DNA of 63,757 nt, filler included, from Octopus bimaculoides (lineage: Eukaryota), in assembly GCF_001194135.2 (NCBI RefSeq). It is 5 parts of 3 records of this genome, joined end to end, with 100 filler letters (N's around TTAATTAATTAA, not from the genome) between each part and the next. Parts side by side here need not be neighbours in the genome. Positions count along the whole stretch, not along the records: positions 1 to 31,162 come from NC_069004.1; 4 more parts are not named here. One strand, given 5' to 3'. The notes under the pieces were generated by a model. The model worked only from the letters and a program-made list of their open reading frames with translations, was not told where the DNA came from and did no database searches. Below, in pieces: positions 12,896 through 30,145 of this stretch (the first letter of the stretch is position 1; the number at the start of each line of letters is the position of its first letter). Made by a program: the position numbers and the translations under genes.

Positions 12896-12987
12896 TTAAA
12901 CTCTTTGCTTGTCCAAAGCATCTTCATAAGATCTCCTAAGCGTTCTTGTTTGTTTTCAGGCTTTTAACGAACCCCTTGTTTCATACT

Positions 12988-13404
12988 CTCTTTTTACTCT
13001 TTTACTCTTTTAGCTGTTTCAGTCATTTGACTGTGGTGATGCTGGAGCACCGCCTTTGGTCGAGCAAATCGCCCCCAGAACTTATTCTTTGTAAGCCTAG
13101 TACTTATTCTATCGGTCTCTTTTGCCGAACCGCGAAGTTACGGGGACGTAAACACACCAGCATCGGTTGTCAAGCGATGTTGGGGGTGGGGACAAACACA
13201 GACATACAAACACATACATACATATATATACATATATACGACGGGCTTCTTCCAGTTTCCGTCTACCAAATCCACTCACAAGGCTTTGGTCGGCCCGAGG
13301 CTATAGTTGAAGACACTTGCCCAAAGTGCCACGCAGTGGGACTGAACCCGGAACCATGTGGTTCGTAAGCAAGCTACTTACCACACAGCCACTCCTACGC
13401 CTAT
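12988..13404 (-). mobile_element. SINE family A, full length (reference copy)
   Basis: Head ggcgtaggagtggctgtgtggtaag...gggttcagtccc (Pol III A/B boxes), central (TA/TG)n tract, tail cagtcaaatgactgaaac and (aaaag)n. Probably one of the known tRNA-derived octopus SINE families, not assignable without a search. Confidence 0.9.
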
Positions 13405-14677: not shown

Positions 14678-14845
14678 GATGCAGGGCTAGCTGTGTGGGA
14701 AGAAGTTTGCTTCCCAACCACATCGTTCCGGTTTCAGTTCCATCACATGGCACCTTGGACAAGTGTCTTCTACTATAAGCTTCAGGCCAACCAATGCCTT
14801 GTGAGTGGATTTGATGGACGGAAACTGAAAGTAGCCCGTCGTGTA
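14678..14845 (+). mobile_element. SINE family A 5' half
   Basis: Head through actgaaagtagcccgtcg then (TA)n into a gap. Confidence 0.8.
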
Positions 14846-15494
14846 TATATATATATATATATATNNNNNNNNNNNNNNNNNNNNNNNNNNNNNNNNNNNN
14901 NNNNNNNNNNNNNNNNNNNNNNNNNNNNNNNNNNNNNNNNNNNNNNNNNNNNNNNNNNNNNNNNNNNNNNNNNNNNNNNNNNNNNNNNNNNNNNNNNNNN
15001 NNNNNNNNNNNNNNNNNNNNNNNNNNNNNNNNNNNNNNNNNNNNNNNNNNNNNNNNNNNNNNNNNNNNNNNNNNNNNNNNNNNNNNNNNNNNNNNNNNNN
15101 NNNNNNNNNNNNNNNNNNNNNNNNNNNNNNNNNNNNNNNNNNNNNNNNNNNNNNNNNNNNNNNNNNNNNNNNNNNNNNNNNNNNNNNNNNNNNNNNNNNN
15201 NNNNNNNNNNNNNNNNNNNNNNNNNNNNNNNNNNNNNNNNNNNNNNNNNNNNNNNNNNNNNNNNNNNNNNNNNNNNNNNNNNNNNNNNNNNNNNNNNNNN
15301 NNNNNNNNNNNNNNNNNNNNNNNNNNNNNNNNNNNNNNNNNNNNNNNNNNNNNNNNNNNNNNNNNNNNNNNNNNNNNNNNNNNNNNNNNNNNNNNNNNNN
15401 NNNNNNNNNNNNNNNNNNNNNNNNNNNGGATATACATCCGTGTTAAAGCTGAACAAGGTCACTGAAAATAGAATTGAATGAGGGTTATCTAGAT

Positions 15495-15774: not shown

Positions 15775-16202
15775 ATCTAGATTAACGTCTATTTAACTTA
15801 AGTTGATGGCGAATTTGACAGGTTAAACAAATGGGATTTAAGGGCACAATCCGAGCGCAAAAGGAACGAACGTGAAGACTCGGGTTTCGATACTTGCTCA
15901 GGAATCCGATATATCTCCTACAAATATTTTGCAGGAAAGAGAACTGGTATTTGTTTGTTTCAGATGCAAATGGTTTATGAGATCTCTGTGTGCTGTGTGT
16001 AGTAGTGGCAGCAGCAGCGGTGGTAGTAGTAGTGGTAGAGCTGATGGTAATCGTAAGAACCGAAACAGGATAATTCTTGCTATTTGAGGGATTATCAGAC
16101 ATTATAAAGTCTAGCATTTGTATAATCTTTAGTCGAGTGTTGTTCATGATGAGATTAGGTGAGGTACGAGGTTACTTCCATGATTGGGATTAAGGCCGAG
16201 TT

Positions 16203-16519
16203 TCTCTTTTACTCTTTTACTTGTTTCAGTTATTTGACTGTGGCCATGCTGGAGCACCACCTTTAGTCGAGCAAATCGACCCTAGCACTTATTCTTTGTA
16301 AGCCTAGTACTTATTCTATCGGTCTTTTTGGCCGAACCGCTAAGTTACAGGGACGTAGACACACCAGCATCGGTTGTCAAGCGATGTTGGGGAGGGGGAC
16401 AAACACAGACACACAAACATATACAAACACACACATATATATACATATATACGACGGGCTCCTTTCAGTTTCCGTCTACCAAATCCACTCACAAGGTTTT
16501 GGTCAGCCCGAGGCTATAG
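16203..16519 (-). mobile_element. SINE family A, head lost in gap
   Basis: Collinear with 12988-13404 from the tail to cccgaggctatag. Confidence 0.9.
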
Positions 16520-17320: not shown

Positions 17321-19992
17321 ACACCCAGAACCGCGCTAATGGCTTAGGAGTGAAATTTAGGATTTCTCGGTTTTCTGTGAATCGATTTTGATAAAACTTT
17401 TCCCAGCTGGTTTGCACACTATGGCAACACCATTGTTATGGTTTCATTATTCTGTGTAGAATCCTTTCTTTTTTATTTCAGATTCTTCACTTTTGGGGTG
17501 AACCACGCTAATAGCTTTTGAATGAAAATAGCCCACCCAGACATTTGTTTTTCAGAAAATGAAGGCTAATGATACATATTAAGCATTGAGTATATATTTA
17601 ACAGAAAACCATAATAATATTATTTATTGACATAATGAATTATGTAGCCACATGAGCGCCAAGGAAGAAATGATCCGATTGTAGGACCTCCAAGACTGTG
17701 ACAGATAGGGATTTAAGGAGTATTGGCCGCAAGTTATGTGGGAAATCTGGACAAACAAGCAAAGCCATTTCCGCCGCCTCCGGACTTCCTCATGTACCAA
17801 ATACTACCAGAAACCACATCCCCGGGACCATGGCTTCTGTGCAAGAAGCCCTGAAACTGCCTCCCCACAGGAGTTTGAAGCTTCAATGGCCCCAAAAGTA
17901 TATGGCATTAGACGAAACCAGGGTGACCCTTGATGAACCTGACGGTTGGGCAAATGGTTGGGTCTACTTTGGAGATGTCACCAACATTTACGACGCCAAG
18001 AAAAGGGTGGAGGAGTCATGTTGTGGGCTGGTATCATTGGGTACAGAGGTTAAAGAGACCGTAGCCGCCGACTTCAATCTCCTGAAGGGGGTCTTGCATC
18101 CCTGGCTAGATAGATACCGCTATCACTTCTAAGGAATCTCGTATTCATGCATGAGAACGCTCCCTCCCATTCTGCTAGAACCACCCAAACATTATTAGAG
18201 TCTTACGGCATACAAAGTGAAAGGTTGATGGTGTGGCTGCTAGTATCTCTGGATCTGAACCCTATCGAATACAGGGTGCGTAAGATATTTGAGGACAGAT
18301 TTATATTTATAAAAAAAAAACAAATATATAATAACAGATAATAACTTTTCTATAAGGTTATTCAATAAAGCCACCTTCAACTTCAACAACTGCTTCTATA
18401 TGAGATCTAAATCATCTACGTCCTCGAATCAAGTGGCCCTGGTTCATTTTGGACATTATTCTGACTATGGCAGCTTTCAAAGAATCTGTTGGTGTTATTG
18501 GCGTGTTCATTGAACTCCCTCTCTCGATAATGCTCTAAATGTAATAATCCAATGAATTAAGATCTGGGGAATTAGGAGGTCAAATGTTAGGGATTATGTG
18601 ATCATGAAATTTTTCAGCCATCCATTCCTGTGTCACTAGAGCCATATGTGAAAGTGCAGAGTCTTCCTGAAACACATATGGCCTTCCATTGCATACAATA
18701 TCTATCCAGAGCTTAGCAATTATTTCCAGAACCTCAGTGTAGGCGTAGAGTTAACTCTAAGGCCTTATGGAAAGAAGTAAGGAGGCATCACATGTCCTTC
18801 ATTGCTGACAGCCCCTAAAACCATGACAGCTGCAGGAAACTTTGTATGCATAACACTTGTAACTTCAGAAGGGTCTGCACATAACCATCTGTCATTTCTT
18901 CTGTTAACTTTCTAATCTTAGTCGAAGTTTTTCTCGTTTGAGTAAAACCAAATCAAATCTTCTTCTGGATTTTTCAGTTTGTTTAAGAGCCTTTTAGATT
19001 TGATGTAGTGATTTTCTTTTGCTTTTTCTGACAAACTGACCTTTCCCCATCATATAATACATATCTGATGTCTTTGTGGACAACATTTCTGACTGTTACT
19101 TCTGACACATGGAGATCTTTTGCAATTGACCTCATAGACTTTCTGGGATTGTAACCAATGGTCTGTTGAGCTTGCTGGATAAATTCAGGTGTTCTGATGA
19201 TTTCGGAGTGTTTAGAATGCTTTTTTATGCGTTGATACTGGTGATACGTTTCCAACTTCAGTCTCTAGCCCCTTACAAACTTTGTAGGCAAAAGATCTGG
19301 CAACTTTTAAAAATCGAGATATTTCTAAATCGCTATGCTCAGCCTTTATAACCACAATAACAGCATAGCTCTTCATTTCTTGAGTAAGCTGAGGGTCTGC
19401 CATTATTATTTTCTGAAACAAAGATTATACAGAGAAAGCAAAAAATTCAGCAATGACCCAAAAAAGGCATGTCTTCAAACACCTTATGCACCCTGCTTCT
19501 TTGATCCGCCATTAAATAAGATTTTATCCCGAAGGACGTCAATTTACGTCGAAAAATGTCTTATGGACGACCATGAAAGCTGCAGCAGAGGCAGTCCAAC
19601 TTGTTACAGTTAAGAAATTGTCAGATTCCATGATTAATAGGGTTTTTAAAGTTATCCATCGAAATGGCGCTCATGTGGCTACATAATTCATTATGCCAAT
19701 AAATGTTATAATATCATTATGGTTTTCTGTTAAATATATACTCATTGTATGCTTAATATGTATCATTACTCTTCATTTTCTGAAAAAAAAGAAGAAAAAA
19801 CTATCTAGATGAGCAATTTTCATTCAAAAGCTATTAACGTGGTTCATCCCAAAACTGAAGAATCTGAAATAAAAAAATAAAGGATTCTACACAGAATAAT
19901 GAAACCATAACAATGGTGTTGCCATAGTGTGCAAACCAGCTGGGAAATGTTTTATAGAAATCGATTAACAGAAAACCGAGAAATCCTAAATT
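17321..19992 (+). mobile_element. Decayed DD37E (TRT-like) Tc1 element with ~310-330 bp TIRs
   Basis: Inverted repeats 17354-17661 and 19665-19992. Transposase remnants DETRVTLDEPDGW, GGGVMLWAGII, and HENAPSH...DLNPIE with 37 residues between the second acidic residue (here E, from D) and the final E; C-terminus RQFTSKNVLW...SMINRVFKVI resumes at ~19530. Confidence 0.8.
18272..19495 (-). mobile_element. Decayed DD37D (maT-like) element nested in the DD37E element
   Basis: TIRs cagggtgcgtaagatatttgagg (18272) and its approximate reverse complement (19470-19495), left TA at 18270-18271. Remnants QEMKSYAVIV..KAEHSDLEI, RTPEF, HTKFPAAVMVLG, and FQEDSA...SPDLNSLDYY with 37-residue D-D spacing after restoring one frameshift. 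Confidence 0.85.
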
Positions 19993-20002
19993 GTTTTAAT
20001 TT

Positions 20003-20203
20003 TATTTGTTTCAGTCATTTGACTTGCGGCCATGCTGGAACACTGCCTTTAGTCGAGCAAATCAACCCCAGAACTTATTCTTTGTAGGTCTAGTACTTAT
20101 TTTATCGGTCTTTCTTGCCGAACCGCTAATGTTACGGGGACGAAAACACACCACCATCGGTTGTCAAGCGATGTTGGGGGCACAAACACAGACACACAAA
20201 CAT

Positions 20204-20250
<47 letters not shown>

Positions 20251-20650
20251 NNNNNNNNNNNNNNNNNNNNNNNNNNNNNNNNNNNNNNNNNNNNNNNNNN
20301 NNNNNNNNNNNNNNNNNNNNNNNNNNNNNNNNNNNNNNNNNNNNNNNNNNNNNNNNNNNNNNNNNNNNNNNNNNNNNNNNNNNNNNNNNNNNNNNNNNNN
20401 NNNNNNNNNNNNNNNNNNNNNNNNNNNNNNNNNNNNNNNNNNNNNNNNNNNNNNNNNNNNNNNNNNNNNNNNATATATATATATATATACGATGGGCTTC
20501 TTTCAGTTTCCGTCTACCAAATCCATTCACAAGGCTTTGGTCGGCTCGAGGCTACAGTAGAAGACGCTTGCCCAAGGTGCCACGCATTGGAACTGAACCC
20601 GGAACCATGTGGTTGGTAAGCAAGCTACTTAACACACAGCCACTCCTGCT
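20003..20650 (-). mobile_element. SINE family A, full length with internal gap
   Basis: Tail at 20003-20200, head at 20490-20650, central microsatellite partly N. Confidence 0.9.
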
Positions 20651-21182: not shown

Positions 21183-22696
21183 NNNNNNNNNNNNNNNNNN
21201 NNNNNNNNNNNNNNNNNNNNNNNNNNNNNNNNNNNNNNNNNNNNNNNNNNNNNNNNNNNNNNNNNNNNNNNNNNNNNNNNNNNNNNNNNNNNNNNNNNNN
21301 NNNNNNNNNNNNNNNNNNNNNNNNNNNNNNNNNNNNNNNNNNNNNNNNNNNNNNNNNNNNNNNNNNNNNNNNNNNNNNNNNNNNNNNNNNNNNNNNNNNN
21401 NNNNNNNNNNNNNNNNNNNNNNNNNNNNNNNNNNNNNNNNNNNNNNNNNNNNNNNNNNNNNNNNNNNNNNNNNNNNNNNNNNNNNNNNNNNNNNNNNNNN
21501 NNNNNNNNNNNNNNNNNNNNNNNNNNNNNNNNNNNNNNNNNNNNNNNNNNNNNNNNNNNNNNNNNNNNNNNNNNNNNNNNNNNNNNNNNNNNNNNNNNNN
21601 NNNNNNNNNNNNNNNNNNNNNNNNNNNNNNNNNNNNNNNNNNNNNNNNNNNNNNNNNNNNNNNNNNNNNNNNNNNNNNNNNNNNNNNNNNNNNNNNNNNN
21701 NNNNNNNNNNNNNNNNNNNNNNNNNNNNNNNNNNNNNNNNNNNNNNNNNNNNNNNNNNNNNNNNNNNNNNNNNNNNNNNNNNNNNNNNNNNNNNNNNNNN
21801 NNNNNNNNNNNNNNNNNNNNNNNNNNNNNNNNNNNNNNNNNNNNNNNNNNNNNNNNNNNNNNNNNNNNNNNNNNNNNNNNNNNNATATATATATATATAC
21901 GAGTTGCATTACAGAAGTTTTGAAGTTGTATTTTTTAGAAGAGGCAATTACAACTTCTTAGATTAGTATGATTTTAATATATATCATTACCGCATATCTA
22001 ATAAGCTGACCTGCCAACATTTGTTATTCCAGATTGAAGGAGACGAACTAAGCCTACTAAACATTGCTTACCGCAGCTGACTATTTCGTAGAATGGAGTC
22101 GGAACATGAAGACAATTTGGAAGTTCGTTATGCAGTGATGTTTTGTGTTAAACTGGGCAAGAACTCTGCAGAGACTTATGGAATTCTTCAGACTGCTTCA
22201 ATTTTTGGTTGACACAAGAGGCCAGTCAAAACAAGATCACCGAGGAACTCATAATGATCCCCTTTTTAACAGTAAGGGGATCATCTACATCCACTGGGTT
22301 TCCTCTGGCCTGACGGTCAACGAAGATTATTTTGTGAATGTTTTTAGGGAGTTCAAGAAAAGATTCCGTTGCTAAAGGCCGGAGCCCTTGCTCCAGTACA
22401 ATGCATCAGTCCACAATTCCATCCTAGTAAGCAATTACATGACAGAGATGGACTTCAAAACTATCCTTACAACTCTATACCTTGCTCCTTGAGACCTTTG
22501 GTCGTCGTCTTAGCTGAAGGAGAACCTCAGGGGTAATCATTTTGAAGACATTTAAAAGACGAAGGAGGCTTTGAAAAGGATCCGGAACACCTTCACTTTG
22601 GAAGACTTCCATGGGGCCTTCACGAAGTGGCTGGAGCGATACAATAAGTTCATTGAACTCAGAAGATTCCATTTTGAAAAAGATTAGATTTTTGTA

Positions 22697-23108
22697 AAGT
22701 AATGTTTGTCGCCACTTCAACATGGCTGTTCCGTACGAACCGACATTATTAGCCCCAAGAGGACGCCTCCCCTATTTTCTATATACTGTGAGCTGGAACG
22801 AACTACTGCTAACTATAGCGGACAGGGGTCCACCACTGAGGATGGGCAAAATTGCCCGAAACCGGAAGGTCTAGTGGTCCTGTCAAGTTGCCAGAAAATG
22901 GTAGGGGTTCGTTCCCCTGCTTGCAATATATATTGGGTGCAGATTGCATCGATAACCAGCTAAAGGAGGTGTCCTCACGAGGTTAAAAAATGGTAGTAAC
23001 TTCGGTTCGTACGGAACAGCCTTTCTGAAGTGGCAACGGATATTACTTCTCGGTATAGTTACTAGTTTCATCTCTTATAGAAATTTTCTAACTAGCTATT
23101 ATGCTTGT
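22697..23108 (+). mobile_element. 412-bp fold-back retro-insertion carrying a hammerhead ribozyme
   Basis: Flanked by a 14-bp near-perfect duplication (attagatttttgta 22683-22696 / attagagttttgta 23109-23122) of mariner sequence that is single in copy 1. Imperfect inverted arms from 22697 to 23048 include a perfect 20-bp ggctgttccgtacgaaccga pair. Confidence 0.8.
22821..22884 (+). ncRNA. Type I hammerhead ribozyme
   Basis: CUGAGGA 22836-22842, extra U, stem II GGGCA/UGCCC, GAAA 22858-22861, stem III ACC/GGU closed by a GGAA loop, GUC cleavage triplet (cut after 22871), stem I ccacca/tagtgg (one mismatch) plus gacagg/cctgtc. Confidence 0.8.
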
Positions 23109-23324
23109 ATTAGAGTTTTGTATTTCTTGAAATTTATAAATGCTTTTCCTTGAAAAGTCTCAGAAATTCTAGAATGCACCTCGTATTATTGTATATGCTA
23201 CACTACAAAATAAAGATGCAACATTGACATTCCGGCCATTGATGGTCCAGAACTTGTTAGGGTCCCTATACTAAGTTACAATGAAGTACAAGTACTGGTA
23301 TTTCTTTTAATTATGTTTTAGCCT

Positions 23325-23720
23325 TTATCTTGTTTCAGTCATTTGACTGCGGCCATACTGGGACATTGCCTTAAAGAATTTTAGTCGACTTAATCGACCT
23401 TTGTACTATTTTCTTTTAAAGCCTGGTACGTATTCAATCAGTCTCTTTTGCCGAACCGCTAATGTACGGTGACATAAACACACCAACATCGGTTGTTAAG
23501 CGATGGTGGGGGTGGGGTACAAACACAGACACGCGTACACCATCCCCACACATATATATACGACGGGCTTCTTTCAGTTTCCGTCTACCAAATCCACTCA
23601 GAAGGCTTTGGTCGGCCTGAGGCTATAGTAGAAAACAGTTGCCTAAAGTTCCAACAGTGGGACTGAGCCCGGAACAATGTGGTTGGGAAACAATCTTCTT
23701 TACCACACAGCCACGCCTGT
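23325..23720 (-). mobile_element. SINE family A, full length
   Basis: Collinear with 12988-13404. Confidence 0.9.
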
Positions 23721-24279: not shown

Positions 24280-24311
<32 letters not shown>

Positions 24312-24479
24312 TTCTATGTATGTATGTCTACGTATAGCTGTCTAAAAATCCATGAGTCAGGAAAGAAAATTGAGTGTTCGTATGGTGAGTGGGTATTGGG
24401 TGAAGAAAAATCCAAGACTGGGTGCCTGGCATCTAAAATATCGTCAGGCGCTGACAGCCCTCTAAGAGTCGGGCAATGG

Positions 24480-25116
24480 GATCGGTGGATGTTCCACTTT
24501 AGAAATTTATAGAGGATTAGTGGCGGGGAGGTGCGACGATGTTCTCGGGGAGACTCTGGGCGCCGACGGAAATGAACTGATTAGTCTGTTCCAGAGGATT
24601 TTCCGGTCGGGAACTATCATGGATAATTTCCACTTGTCCTTGGCCTAGCAGTGCCACCGGGGGCGCTACTGGTTCGAGATAAACTGTACAGGCACGGATG
24701 TGTTGTCAGACGGGCTTGTCCAAGGTGCGTCCAGATTGACGAAACCGTTCTGCACGCACTCGTTAAGTATCCAGGCATTGCTGACTTGTGTTGTGTCACG
24801 TGTGGGAAGGATCCATCTATCGGTCGGGTTTGTAGAAATGATTGCCCCGCTGCCCTCCTTCAGTCGGGCAGGCAAGACAGTTGTCCTTTGCCTGGTGGCT
24901 GTGGCGAAAGAAGTTGTTTGATGGACAAGGCTGAAAGGCATGAGGACAAATACATTCCTCTTTGGTAGAACTCTCATTGACTTCTTCAAGTTTCACTTGA
25001 AAAGGAAATTGAGAGTGGAGAGGGAAGTGCTGTCCTCGTGTAAGTTTATTGAAAGATGAGTGAAAGTTGCGAAAATGGCAAGAGTGGATGGTACCTCTCT
25101 AAGTATAGACTTGTGA
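24480..25116 (+). mobile_element. L1/Tx1-clade LINE ORF2 3' fragment with zinc-knuckle region
   Basis: FHLSLA*QCHRGALLVRDKLYRHG...CPRC..DETVLHAL...LVAVAKEVV/WWTRLKG...FFKFHLKRKLRVERE, the post-RT CCHC region of Tx1-like elements; stops and frameshifts present. Confidence 0.8.
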
Positions 25117-26210: not shown

Positions 26211-28162
26211 TTCATTTGATTATAATACACCAATGAGTCTTGCGACTTGTCGGACACCCTACAGTATACCATCAACGTACTATTCAGCGTAACGTGTGAT
26301 TTGGTCTAGGCTCGAGGCGCTAGATATTCATAAGGTTCGTTTCCTCTGTGAACACAACTACCAACCATAGGTCAGAACCACATGTTTATCCAACCCTACC
26401 TGGTGCATATCTTTTCAAGTACCTGATTCTATTTGAATCCTTATTTTACTATATATNNNNNNNNNNNNNNNNNNNNNNNNNNNNNNNNNNNNNNNNNNNN
26501 NNNNNNNNNNNNNNNNNNNNNNNNNNNNNNNNNNNNNNNNNNNNNNNNNNNNNNNNNNNNNNNNNNNNNNNNNNNNNNNNNNNNNNNNNNNNNNNNNNNN
26601 NNNNNNNNNNNNNNNNNNNNNNNNNNNNNNNNNNNNNNNNNNNNNNNNNNNNNNNNNNNNNNNNNNNNNNNNNNNNNNNNNNNNNNNNNNNNNNNNNNNN
26701 NNNNNNNNNNNNNNNNNNNNNNNNNNNNNNNNNNNNNNNNNNNNNNNNNNNNNNNNNNNNNNNNNNNNNNNNNNNNNNNNNNNNNNNNNNNNNNNNNNNN
26801 NNNNNNNNNNNNNNNNNNNNNNNNNNNNNNNNNNNNNNNNNNNNNNNNNNNNNNNNNNNNNNNNNNNNNNNNNNNNNNNNNNNNNNNNNNNNNNNNNNNN
26901 NNNNNNNNNNNNNNNNNNNNNNNNNNNNNNNNNNNNNNNNNNNNNNNNNNNNNNNNNNNNNNNNNNNNNNNNNNNNNNNNNNNNNNNNNNNNNNNNNNNN
27001 NNNNNNNNNNNNNNNNNNNNNNNNNNNNNNNNNNNNNNNNNNNNNNNNNNNNNNNNNNNNNNNNNNNNNNNNNNNNNNNNNNNNNNNNNNNNNNNNNNNN
27101 NNNNNNNNNNNNNNNNNNNNNNNNNNNNNNNNNNNNNNNNNNNNNNNNNNNNNNNNNNNNNNNNNNNNNNNNNNNNNNNNNNNNNNNNNNNNNNNNNNNN
27201 NNNNNNNNNNNNNNNNNNNNNNNNNNNNNNNNNNNNNNNNNNNNNNNNNNNNNNNNNNNNNNNNNNNNNNNNNNNNNNNNNNNNNNNNNNNNNNNNNNNN
27301 NNNNNNNNNNNNNNNNNNNNNNNNNNNNNNNNNNNNNNNNNNNNNNNNNNNNNNNNNNNNNNNNNNNNNNNNNNNNNNNNNNNTATATATATATATATCG
27401 TGGGAAGAACCATTTTAACGATGTGTACTGCCTTAATTCTTCGAAACGTCGGTGTTTTAATGGTGGCAGCTGATGATGAAGGAGATGTTTCTATGTGGCC
27501 TGCTTGTTTGTTGTACCGTGTCTATCATTTTGTCCATGTTCTTTTGCCACGTCATGTACCCAGTTATGTATCTATATGTACATGTGGATGAAGGTATGTA
27601 CATACATGTACATATATATGCATATACTCATATATTGTTTGTATCACGACAGAACGCACGCGTTAACCTTTATACAGTAAGTTTTAACTATTTTTCTAAC
27701 NNNNNNNNNNTATGCATATACTCATATATTGTTTGTATCACGACAGAACGCACGCGTTAACCTTTATACAGTAAGTTTTAACTATTTTTCTAACGCGACT
27801 CTCCCTATCTCTATATCTATCTCCCCCTCTCATTCTTCCCTCTACTGTTCTTCGCCTCTCCCTGTCACTACTATCTCTCTCTCTATCTCTTATTGCTCGT
27901 CCTTCACCTCTCACCGCTACTACTACTATCTCTCCCCCTCTCTACCTCTCGTTGCTCACTTTTATTCTACTTCCTCCCCTTCTTCTTCCTCTGCTACTCT
28001 TTCTCTCTACACAGCGTTGGTCACGTGTGTCCGGCTGCTATTTCTTTTCGTTCTTGGACTCCNNNNNNNNNNNNNNNNNNNNNNNNNNNNNNNNNNNNNN
28101 NNNNNNNNNNNNNNNNNNNNNNNNNNNNNNNNNNNNNNNNNNNNNNNNNNNNNNNNNNNNNN

Positions 28163-29679: not shown

Positions 29680-30145
29680 ATGGGGCGCCGCCTTAAAGAA
29701 TCTTAGTCTAATGGAAGACCCCTAATACTTTTTGTAAAGTCTGGTACTTATTCTATCAGTGTCTTTTGCCGAACCGCTAAATTTACGGAGATGTAAACAC
29801 ACCTCCAACAGTTTATTAAGTGGTGATAGGGGAAACACCGACAGCCTCATGCCGACCAAAATCTTGTGAGTAGATTTGATAAACGGAAACTGAAAGAAGA
29901 CCGTCCTATATATATATATATATATATATATCTGTGTGTCGTTGTGTCTATGTTTGTTCCCACCACCGTTTGACAACTAGTGTTGATGAGTTTATGTCCC
30001 TGCAACCTAGCAGTTCGGCAAAGAAGCCAATAAAATAAACACCAGGCTTTAAAAAATTAAGGACAGGGGTTGATTCCTTCCACTAAAAATTCATCAAGGC
30101 AGCGCTCCAGCATAACCGTAGTCTAATTACAAAAACAAGTGAATA
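29680..30145. mobile_element. Two truncated SINE A copies in divergent orientation
   Basis: 29680-29840 is a minus-strand tail; 29845-30145 is a plus-strand middle and tail. Confidence 0.7.

What the first reader, a model, noticed from the sequence alone, without database searches (positions are those of the whole stretch)
22697..23108. Rod-like fold-back retro-insertion with a hammerhead ribozyme at its tip
Seen: the 412-bp insert sits between 14-bp near-identical duplications of mariner sequence. Its first base starts an inverted repeat that pairs progressively inward: aagtaat/attactt, gccacttca/tgaagtggc, a perfect 20-bp ggctgttccgtacgaaccga pair, gaggacgcctcc/ggaggtgtcctc, tatatactgtgagc..ggaacgaac/gttcgttcccctgcttgcaatatata, and finally gacagg/cctgtc, which is stem I of a type I hammerhead (CUGAGGA-U, GAAA, GNRA-capped stem III, GUC). 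About 60 nt of unpaired tail follow the right arm. Established: hammerheads occur in Penelope-like pseudo-LTRs and in retrozymes, which make small circular RNAs, usually as minimal or tandem motifs; an extra nucleotide after A9 is tolerated in natural hammerheads. Inference: a single full hammerhead capping a ~350-nt rod, inserted with a 14-bp duplication typical of TPRT, could be a circularly permuted retrocopy of a viroid-like rod RNA or an unrecognised non-autonomous ribozyme retroelement. It is not a cut-and-paste MITE.
Basis: partly seen in the sequence, partly recalled or inferred. Interest (0 to 1): 0.85.

Follow-up and report, generated by a model that had tools for sequence, protein, structure and literature searches.

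The report
Hammerhead-bearing Penelope-type retro-insertion in octopus
A 412-bp piece of a hammerhead-ribozyme-carrying retroelement, of the Penelope-like / animal retrozyme kind, was pasted into an old mariner transposon in an octopus genome; its hairpin shape is most likely a scar of how such elements insert, so it is a new example of a known kind.

Summary
The block 22697-23108 (412 bp) is a true insertion. A second, diverged mariner in the same window (2550-2790, minus strand) carries the 14-bp site once, so the 14-bp repeats are a real target-site duplication.

The first 352 bp fold back on themselves (z = -13 on both strands). The apex carries the only hammerhead-descriptor match in the window, where about 0.002 are expected by chance. 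All core nucleotides and three helices are present. Rfam scores it far below threshold (18 bits against 52).

The details match published hallmarks of Penelope-like elements (PLEs):
- an AT-rich target with a variable-length duplication;
- an inverted copy beside a direct copy;
- a unique tail at one end only;

The best reading is a dead, non-coding PLE-type insertion, either a truncated pLTR/ORF-start unit or a non-LTR retrozyme monomer. The "rod" was probably made at the DNA level by reverse transcription primed from both nicked strands. The main rival is a native retrozyme RNA rod.

No other copy could be retrieved, so copy number, covariation and cleavage remain untested. This is a new member of a known kind, of modest interest.

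The parts
21899..22696 (+). Host: decayed mariner, 5' TIR to 14 bp past the transposase stop codon (TAG 22685-22687); has an internal deletion and stop codons
   Evidence: TIR pair TACGAGTTGCATT.../...AATGCACCTCGTA; translation; weak Pfam Transposase_1 match, E = 0.0032, below the cut-off
22683..22696 (.). Left copy of the 14-bp target-site duplication, ATTAGATTTTTGTA (79% A+T)
   Evidence: D7; present once in the paralogous mariner
22697..22835 (+). Left arm: imperfect inverted copy of 22872-23048, starting at the first base of the insert. Under the best explanation it is the cDNA primed from the top-strand nick
   Evidence: 97 matches, 21 mismatches, gaps only in this arm
22821..22885 (+). 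Type I hammerhead motif at the apex of the fold-back: helix I closes onto the rod, helix II is 22844-22857, helix III is 22861-22870
   Evidence: 15 of 19 hammerhead pairs are already in the MFE; enforcing the active fold costs 4.8 kcal/mol
22836..22871 (+). Catalytic core to the cleavage site: CUGAGGA, bulged U22843, GAAA, U16.1, C17. The predicted cut is between 22871 and 22872. A22842-U-G22844 forms an AUG at the start of helix II
   Evidence: sequence; descriptor match; same layout as the anole PLE (PMC11167929); bulged base typical of PLE hammerheads (PMC4209133)
22872..23048 (+). Right arm: direct-sense sequence downstream of the hammerhead. It ends at ...ATTACTT, inferred to be the proximal reverse-transcription start site
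   Evidence: geometry argument in the full report (inference)
23049..23108 (+). Unique 60-nt tail (30% G+C) present at this end only. It forms its own hairpin and ends at ...GCTTGT, inferred to be the distal reverse-transcription start site
   Evidence: no significant similarity to the body; hairpin; absent from the empty site; PLE 'tail' (PMC8557442, PMC11167929)
23109..23122 (.). Right copy of the target-site duplication, ATTAGAGTTTTGTA
   Evidence: D7
23109..23186 (+). Host mariner 3' end with TIR
2550..2790 (-). Paralogous mariner 3' end that serves as the empty site
   Evidence: alignment A1

Best explanation
The 412-bp block is a dead, non-coding retro-insertion of the hammerhead-bearing terminal unit of a Penelope-like element (PLE). 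That unit is either the pLTR/ORF-start junction of a heavily 5'-truncated PLE or its non-autonomous derivative, a non-LTR retrozyme monomer.

Proposed mechanism (each step is inferred except where marked):
1. A PLE GIY-YIG endonuclease made staggered nicks at the two edges of the AT-rich 14-bp site in the mariner 3' UTR. The duplication itself is shown.
2. Both 3'-OH ends primed reverse transcription at two internal start sites of the RNA, 60 nt apart.
3. The bottom-strand primer gave the direct copy: the hammerhead plus 237 nt downstream, ending at 23108.
4. The top-strand primer started at the proximal site, ...ATTACTT (equivalent to 23048). It gave a shorter, inverted copy that stops at the foot of the hammerhead.
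5. The two cDNAs were joined at helix I.

On this reading the 'rod' is an insertion scar that has since diverged by about 18%. The 60-nt 'tail' is the stretch between the two start sites. The hammerhead sits at the apex only because it is the part that was copied once.

In the source element the hammerhead would process multimeric transcripts. In this solo copy it could only cut a read-through transcript once, and it carries an A.C mismatch next to the cleavage site.

The confidence of 0.5 is for the insertion-scar (twin-copy) reading. That the insert is a PLE-associated hammerhead element of either kind I put at about 0.8.
For: - True insertion with a 14-bp duplication in a 79% A+T target beginning with ATT. 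PLE duplications are of variable length, and the anole PLE prefers AT-rich DNA with a 5'-ATT-3' motif (PMC8557442, PMC11167929).
- The inverted repeat begins at base 1 of the insert, while the other end carries a unique one-sided tail. This is the published PLE signature: an inverted 5'-truncated copy plus a tail at one end.
- The purified anole PLE protein nicks and extends both strands. It starts reverse transcription at two adjacent internal sites whose interval is the tail (PMC11167929).
- The bulged U makes an AUG at the start of helix II, with the cut site 27 nt after the AUG. [quoted passage not shown]
- The A.C mismatch at A22873 coincides with a TAG stop. A G there would restore both the base pair and a Trp codon.
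- Arm mismatches look neutral: 14 transitions to 7 transversions, and 7 G:U-type to 7 A:C-type. Both strands fold equally well.
- The arm JC distance of 0.20 is compatible with the single mismatch in the 14-bp duplication (P = 0.26). It also fits the old PLE wave reported in Octopus vulgaris (PMC13282606).
- The window is from Octopus. Cephalopods carry PLEs, and the giant squid genome has 235 Rfam Hammerhead_1 hits (PMC6962438, PMC13282606).
- The hammerhead motif is not a chance match at window scale.
Against: - Only one copy was seen. There is no second copy in the window or in 40 kb of O. vulgaris DNA, and no link to an autonomous PLE could be shown.
- The tail is 60 nt, against the 30-40 nt reported.
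- The arms are only 82% identical, and the right arm is about 40 nt longer. There are 2-3 robust indels, all on one side, which would be natural for an intrinsic imperfect RNA rod.
- The hammerhead has a proper helix III (3 bp plus a GGAA loop) and a 6-position helix I followed by an internal loop. This is closer to the 'canonical' type I motifs of retrozymes than to the minimal PLE motifs (PMC7229834, PMC4209133).
- The frame from the AUG has 3 stops in 89 codons, and its open 51-codon part has no homologue among 1.84 billion representative proteins.
- Rfam does not call the motif.
- Self-cleavage is untested.
Confidence: 0.5

Rival explanations
1. Intrinsic RNA rod. The insert is a unit-length copy of a cephalopod non-LTR retrozyme whose RNA, linear or circular, is natively a highly self-paired rod with the hammerhead at one tip. 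A PLE reverse transcriptase copied one full unit from a fixed start site at the base of the rod.
For: - Metazoan retrozymes are 170-400 nt, below 50% G+C, highly self-paired, carry type I hammerheads and have duplications longer than 4 bp (PMC7229834).
- Dispersed monomers are common (10.64898/2026.07.22.740005).
- The element is 412 bp and 45% G+C, and 73% of the rod is paired.
- The active hammerhead fold costs only 4.8 kcal/mol.
- The hammerhead is of the canonical-like type with a helix III tetraloop.
- The arms are imperfect, with one-sided bulges and side hairpins.
Against: - There is no tandem partner.
- There is no excess of G:U over A:C in the arms, and no strand preference in folding.
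- The insert ends fall exactly at the base of the fold-back with a one-sided tail. The twin-copy model predicts this. The rod model needs an extra assumption, a fixed start site at that junction.
- The ends are not at the cleavage site, so it is not a copy of a linear self-cleaved monomer.
Confidence: 0.3
2. A LINE-mobilised SINE-like element with a hammerhead, analogous to the schistosome SINE-like repeats. The 60-nt tail hairpin would be the 3' recognition module of a partner LINE.
For: A 14-bp duplication is also typical of LINE-type target-primed reverse transcription. The tail forms a stem-loop, as the 3' ends of stringent-type LINEs and SINEs do (my knowledge, not tested).
Against: - There is no tRNA, 5S or 7SL-like head.
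- There is no poly(A) or microsatellite tail.
- The tail matches nothing else in the window, including its LINE-like and SINE-like fragments.
- This model does not explain why the inverted repeat starts at base 1, nor the PLE-type bulged base and AUG.
Confidence: 0.07
3. A DNA-level fold-back or MITE-like element, or a palindromic duplication, in which the hammerhead-like motif is a chance match.
For: The inverted repeats are long and fold equally well on both strands. Rfam does not reach threshold. A relaxed descriptor would give on the order of a hundred chance hits in a 2-3 Gb genome (extrapolated).
Against: - The right arm is not terminal: 60 nt of unique sequence lie inside the duplication.
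- A 14-bp duplication is longer than I know for cut-and-paste superfamilies (my knowledge).
- About 0.0016 descriptor hits are expected per window, and the one hit lies exactly at the apex.
- The motif carries several PLE-specific details.
Confidence: 0.05
4. An endogenised copy of an exogenous viroid-like or ribozyme-bearing circular RNA agent, reverse-transcribed by a host retroelement.
For: The insert is about 400 nt, rod-like, and carries a hammerhead.
Against: - There is no ribozyme of any Rfam family on the minus strand and no hammerhead descriptor hit there.
- The hammerhead is a metazoan type I motif with PLE-specific features.
- The 20-mer and the hammerhead sequence were not found in IMG/VR viral contigs.
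Confidence: 0.03

Closest known systems
Penelope-like element (PLE) insertions and their pLTR hammerheads (Penelope/Poseidon/Neptune clades; anole PAc studied in vitro)
   Same: - AT-rich target and a variable-length duplication.
- An inverted copy next to a direct copy, with an extension ('tail') at one end only.
[quoted passage not shown]
- An AUG at the start of helix II, with the cut site 26-27 nt after it.
- Most genomic hammerheads of this kind are solo remnants of truncated elements (PMC8557442, PMC11167929, PMC4209133).
   Different: - There is no RT or GIY-YIG ORF in or near the insert.
- The tail is 60 nt, not 30-40.
- The hammerhead has a real helix III with a GNRA loop and a helix I internal loop, not the minimal PLE form.
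- Sequence relatedness to any PLE is not shown.
Metazoan non-LTR retrozymes (Cervera & de la Pena 2020; Li et al. 2026 preprint)
   Same: Size class, G+C below 50%, type I hammerhead with a 2-bp-plus-tetraloop helix III 'similar to invertebrate HHRs', highly self-paired RNA, a duplication longer than 4 bp, existence of dispersed monomers, and derivation from PLE pLTRs.
   Different: - Here there is a single unit and no tandem array.
- 412 bp is slightly above the 170-400 nt range first described, although within the 51-972 bp of the 2026 survey.
- The circular RNA was not tested.
- No cephalopod retrozyme is described in the papers I could read.
Rfam Hammerhead_HH9 / Hammerhead_1 (type I hammerheads of animals)
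   Same: The same three-helix layout: 6 positions of helix I, an internal loop, then a distal helix I, with the full core (alignment).
   Different: It scores 18.3 bits against a gathering score of 52. It has an extra U after A9 and an A.C mismatch at 1.2/2.2.
L1 twin priming / inverted retro-insertions
   Same: Both nicked strands prime cDNA, giving an inverted 5' part.
   Different: As I recall, L1 twin priming joins adjacent, non-overlapping parts of the RNA and so makes no inverted repeat. Here both arms copy the same region, as in PLEs.

Membership tests
Hammerhead ribozyme, type I | Conserved core: C3 U4 G5 A6 N7 G8 A9, G12 A13 A14, A15.1-U16.1, H17 | tested here: met
   All are present at 22836-22871, with one extra U after A9. 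The extra base is documented in PLE and some viroid hammerheads (PMC4209133).
Hammerhead ribozyme, type I | Three helices around the core, with helix I open | tested here: met
   Helix II has 5-6 bp and helix III 3 bp plus a GGAA loop. Helix I has 6 proximal positions (one A.C mismatch), an internal loop, then 6 bp.
Hammerhead ribozyme, type I | Rfam gathering score | tested here: not met
   No hit at gathering thresholds. HH9 scores 18.3 bits against 52.
Hammerhead ribozyme, type I | Self-cleavage after H17 | not testable with these tools
   This needs an in vitro transcription and cleavage assay.
Penelope-like element insertion | TPRT-type insertion with a variable-length duplication in AT-rich DNA | tested here: met
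   A 14-bp duplication, 79% A+T, verified against an empty-site paralogue.
Penelope-like element insertion | An inverted 5'-truncated copy adjacent to a direct copy | tested here: inconclusive
   The structure is as predicted, with the inverted repeat starting at base 1. The arms are 82% identical, so origin at insertion rather than an intrinsic RNA rod cannot be decided from one copy.
Penelope-like element insertion | A 30-40-bp 'tail' at one end only | tested here: inconclusive
   A one-sided unique tail is present but is 60 nt long.
Penelope-like element insertion | [quoted passage not shown] | tested here: met
   U22843 is bulged, and A22842-U-G22844 forms an AUG (PMC4209133, PMC11167929).
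Penelope-like element insertion | RT plus GIY-YIG ORF, or sequence identity to the pLTR of an autonomous PLE in the same genome | tested here: not met
   There is no ORF in the insert. The AUG frame has 3 stops in 89 codons, and its open 51-codon part has no homologue. Comparison with octopus PLE consensus sequences was not possible with these tools.
Non-LTR retrozyme | Tandem repeats (two or more units), each with a type I hammerhead | tested here: not met
   This is a single unit with no second copy in the window. Monomeric offspring are described (10.64898/2026.07.22.740005), so membership as a monomer stays open.
Non-LTR retrozyme | Small, low-GC unit whose RNA is highly self-paired | tested here: met
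   412 bp, 45% G+C, z = -13, and 73% of the rod paired.
Non-LTR retrozyme | Expressed as a circular RNA joined at the cleavage site | not testable with these tools
   No RNA-seq data could be reached.
Cut-and-paste MITE / Foldback element | Terminal inverted repeats at both ends, flanked by a short superfamily-specific duplication | tested here: not met
   The right arm ends 60 nt inside the duplication, and the duplication is 14 bp.
tRNA/5S/7SL-derived SINE | A pol III gene-derived head | tested here: not met
   ARAGORN finds nothing. There is no tRNA, 5S or 7SL hit at E<=10.
Viroid-like / HDV-like replicating circular RNA | Ribozyme or processing signal in both polarities, or an asymmetric cycle with evidence of RNA replication | tested here: not met
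   Only the plus strand has a ribozyme motif.

The most novel reading that the evidence does not exclude
The fold-back is the native rod of a so far undescribed cephalopod retrozyme family, not an insertion scar. This unit-length copy, whose ends lie exactly at the base of the rod next to a 60-nt hairpin, would then record a fixed internal start site of a PLE reverse transcriptase on a circular or unit-length hammerhead RNA. A related possibility is that inverted-plus-direct PLE insertions such as this one are the evolutionary source of the rod-shaped, hammerhead-capped RNAs that become retrozymes.
Probability: 0.3. Interest if true: 0.5.

Novelty: new member of a known kind. Interest (0 to 1): 0.3.

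Why it matters
The finding gives a cleanly delimited hammerhead-bearing retro-insertion in an octopus. It has an empty-site control, exact ends and a 14-bp duplication. For cephalopods I found only Rfam counts of hammerheads (giant squid), not descriptions of the elements that carry them.

The locus shows in genomic DNA the geometry that the 2024 in vitro work on the anole PLE predicts. Both strands prime, and two start sites a few tens of nucleotides apart leave a one-sided tail.

It is also a caution. A viroid-like rod capped by a ribozyme can be produced by the insertion mechanism itself, so fold-back shape alone should not be read as evidence for a rod-shaped RNA agent.

If the family proves abundant and expressed in octopus, it would extend animal retrozymes to cephalopods.

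Tried and rejected
Searches for other copies:
- The rest of the window: none, using the 20-mer with up to 3 mismatches and blastn at word size 7.
- IMG/VR viral contigs, with the 20-mer and the 27-nt hammerhead: 0 hits.
- JGI/ENA metagenome contigs, with the 18-mer: 49 loci. All are single short matches in bacterial contigs sharing the same 24-nt context, and none extends into the element.
- Protein-level routes, hoping that element ORFs had been called as genes: the 85-aa ORF found nothing.
- The mariner pseudo-protein found nothing.
- Exact look-ups of window ORFs and of P0003 and P0004 are not on record.
- A SINE-derived ORF did reach Octopus vulgaris proteins and two 20-kb loci. Neither locus contains the element or the mariner.

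Test of the PLE-ORF idea:
- The 51-codon open stretch gave 0 hits among 1.84 billion representatives. The result is inconclusive because the query is short and decayed.

Other checks:
- Tail against body similarity: none above shuffles.
- G:U against A:C asymmetry in the arms: none.
- I first counted 7 one-sided gaps as evidence against a twin-copy origin. On inspection only 2-3 indels are robust, so I dropped that argument.
- A relaxed minimal-hammerhead hit in O. vulgaris L051 lies in an (AAT)n-flanked repeat without a PLE ORF, and I treated it as chance.
- Pfam on neighbouring decayed ORFs gave only a sub-threshold mariner hit.
- Supplementary files with octopus or PLE consensus sequences are not held.

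Full report
**1. What is there**

The window is a gap-rich eukaryotic scaffold full of microsatellites and transposon debris.

The finding lies inside a decayed mariner.
- Its terminal inverted repeats are at about 21899 and 23186. The transposase frame ends at TAG 22685-22687.
- A Pfam Transposase_1 match is weak and below the cut-off.

A second, diverged copy of the same kind of mariner lies at 2563-3221 on the minus strand.
- Aligned across the site, it carries ATTAAAGTTTTGTA once and continues directly into the mariner 3' end.
- This serves as an empty site.

**2. The fold-back and the hammerhead**

Positions 22697-23048 fold at -167.5 kcal/mol.
- This is z = -13.2, and none of 100 shuffles did as well. 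The minus strand folds equally well, z = -13.6.
- The 20-mer GGCTGTTCCGTACGAACCGA pairs perfectly with its inverted copy.

The apex carries a complete type I hammerhead layout.
- The order is CUGAGGA, an extra U, a 5-6-bp helix II, GAAA, a 3-bp helix III closed by GGAA, then U16.1 and C17 (22871).
- Helix I has six positions with one A.C mismatch, then an internal loop, then six base pairs that continue into the rod.

Evidence on whether the motif is real:
- Rfam does not call it: nothing at gathering thresholds, nothing at E<=10 in 601 nt, and HH9 at 18.3 bits against 52 in a 96-nt search.
- A structural descriptor I wrote finds this one site on both strands of the window. It found one site in 40 Mb of composition-matched random sequence, or about 0.0016 expected per window.
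- Enforcing the active hammerhead fold costs 4.8 kcal/mol relative to the minimum free energy structure, which already contains 15 of its 19 pairs.
- The tail (23049-23108) is not unpaired, because it forms its own hairpin. It resembles nothing else in the insert.

**3. Where it comes from**

No tRNA, 5S or other Rfam family matches the insert.

The organism is an Octopus. The stop-free translation of the SINE-like repeat that litters the window matches annotated 'hypothetical proteins' of O. vulgaris and O. bimaculoides.

I could not obtain another copy of the element.
- It was absent from the window, viral contigs, metagenome contigs and 40 kb of O. vulgaris DNA. Protein-based look-ups also failed.
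- Copy number, variable ends and covariation are therefore untested.

**4. What the literature says about such structures**

On retrozymes:
- Animal type I hammerheads mostly lie in non-LTR retrozymes. These are 170-400-nt, low-GC units with highly self-paired RNAs, and their duplications exceed 4 bp (PMC7229834).
- Dispersed monomers are common, and the units derive from PLE pLTRs (10.64898/2026.07.22.740005).

On PLE insertions:
- They show variable-length duplications, partial tandems, 'often an inverted 5'-truncated copy immediately adjacent', and a 30-40-bp tail at one end only (PMC8557442).
- The purified anole PLE protein nicks and extends both DNA strands and prefers AT-rich targets with a 5'-ATT-3' motif.
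- It starts reverse transcription at two adjacent internal sites, and the interval between them is the tail.
- Its ORF starts at the beginning of hammerhead stem II, with the cut site 26 bp after the start codon (PMC11167929).

On PLE hammerheads:
- Most occur as solo motifs from truncated elements, and some occur as pairs on opposite strands 100-700 bp apart (PMC4209133).

On cephalopods:
- PLEs are one of the six transposon orders reported in O. vulgaris. An old wave lies at JC distance 0.2, and 30 families are recently active (PMC13282606).
- The giant squid genome has 235 Rfam Hammerhead_1 hits (PMC6962438).

**5. How the locus fits**

- The target is 79% A+T and begins with ATT.
With A9 and G10.1 it spells AUG at the start of helix II, and the cut site lies 27 nt after the AUG.
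- The stop codon TAG at 22872-4 uses the same A22873 that breaks the 1.2/2.2 base pair. A G there would repair both.
- The last 51 codons of that frame are open, which happened in 3% of shuffles. However, the frame has three stops overall and no detectable homologue. Coding ancestry is therefore only a hint.

The geometry works out as follows (my inference).
- Nicks at the two edges of the 14-bp site leave two 3'-OH ends.
- Extension of the top strand after ...GTA yields the left arm. This is a cDNA whose template ended at ...ATTACTT (equivalent to 23048).
- Extension of the bottom strand yields a cDNA whose template ended at ...GCTTGT (23108).
- Two start sites 60 nt apart then explain two things at once: why the inverted repeat starts at base 1, and why a unique tail sits at the other end only.

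**6. Was the rod made in DNA or in RNA?**

The arms align with 97 matches and 21 mismatches.
- There are 14 transitions and 7 transversions.
- G:U-type and A:C-type mismatches number 7 each, so there is no sign of selection for pairing on the hammerhead strand.

The JC distance between the arms is 0.20. One mismatch in the 14-bp duplication is compatible with that (P = 0.26), and so is the age of octopus PLE waves. A twin-copy origin followed by neutral decay is therefore allowed.

Against it:
- The right arm is about 40 nt longer, through 2-3 robust one-sided indels, including a small side hairpin.
- The hammerhead is of the canonical-like kind that the literature associates with retrozymes.
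- Its helix I has the internal loop six positions from the core, as in native type I motifs.

One copy cannot settle this. I put the insertion-scar reading at about 0.5 and the intrinsic retrozyme rod at about 0.3. Both are PLE-associated and already described in kind.

**7. Rejected or unlikely readings**

- Cut-and-paste MITE or foldback element: the arm is not terminal and the duplication is 14 bp.
- LINE-dependent SINE: there is no pol III head, no A-rich or microsatellite tail, and the tail is unmatched.
- Endogenised viroid-like agent: only one polarity has a ribozyme, and the motif has metazoan, PLE-type features.
- Chance motif: refuted at window scale.

**8. Verdict**

It is wrong in treating the element as unrecognised, and probably wrong in reading the fold-back as an RNA rod.

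This is a new member of a known kind, of modest interest. It is worth a genome-wide family survey in octopus assemblies, which would decide between the two leading readings.

Noticed in passing
window 12946-13368 (reference copy); also 16201-16519, 23331-23718, 20000-20647, 655-844, 14690-14862(-), 1633-1787(-), 8444-8604(-), 7672-7898(-), 3484-3585, 29731-29803: At least ten copies or fragments of one SINE-like repeat of about 400 bp, many abutting N gaps and (TA)n/(CA)n runs. Its stop-free translation matches annotated 'hypothetical' or 'secreted' proteins of Octopus vulgaris, and part of an O. bimaculoides UBC-domain protein record. These are probably repeat-derived annotation artefacts.
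   Followed up: partly
window 2563-3221 (-): A second, diverged mariner copy, 67-81% identical to the one carrying the insert. It served as the empty-site control.
   Followed up: yes
window 22842-22874: The hammerhead's extra U creates an AUG at the start of helix II. The in-frame TAG right after the cleavage site uses the same A22873 that disrupts the 1.2/2.2 pair. The layout mirrors the ORF start of the anole PLE (PMC11167929).
   Followed up: partly
window 17698-19300, both strands: Nested, decayed Tc1/mariner-like reading frames, including an intact 144-aa ORF at 17698-18132. No Pfam family matched at E<=0.01, and the ORF is not on record in the protein collection.
   Followed up: partly
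window 24300-25000 (+): A Cys/His-rich ORF (24651-24968) that looks to me like the C-terminal zinc-binding end of a non-LTR reverse transcriptase. Pfam gave no hit.
   Followed up: partly
metagenome loci L001-L049: The 18-mer GCTGTTCCGTACGAACCG recurs in 49 bacterial metagenome contigs, many from human gut, within a shared 24-nt context. It is presumably a conserved bacterial gene segment unrelated to the element.
   Followed up: no
L051:17997-18032 (+), Octopus vulgaris OX597820.1: A relaxed minimal-hammerhead descriptor hit (CUGAUGA, a bulged A, a helix II of at least 4 bp, GAAA) inside an (AAT)n-flanked inverted repeat with no PLE ORF nearby. Probably chance.
   Followed up: partly
window-wide N runs (e.g. 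1067-1632, 21183-21884, 26457-27383): Thirteen assembly gaps of 10-927 bp. The sequence beside the gaps I looked at (for example 21183-21884) is TA or CA microsatellite. The mariner's 5' end abuts one such gap, so its upstream context is unknown.
   Followed up: no
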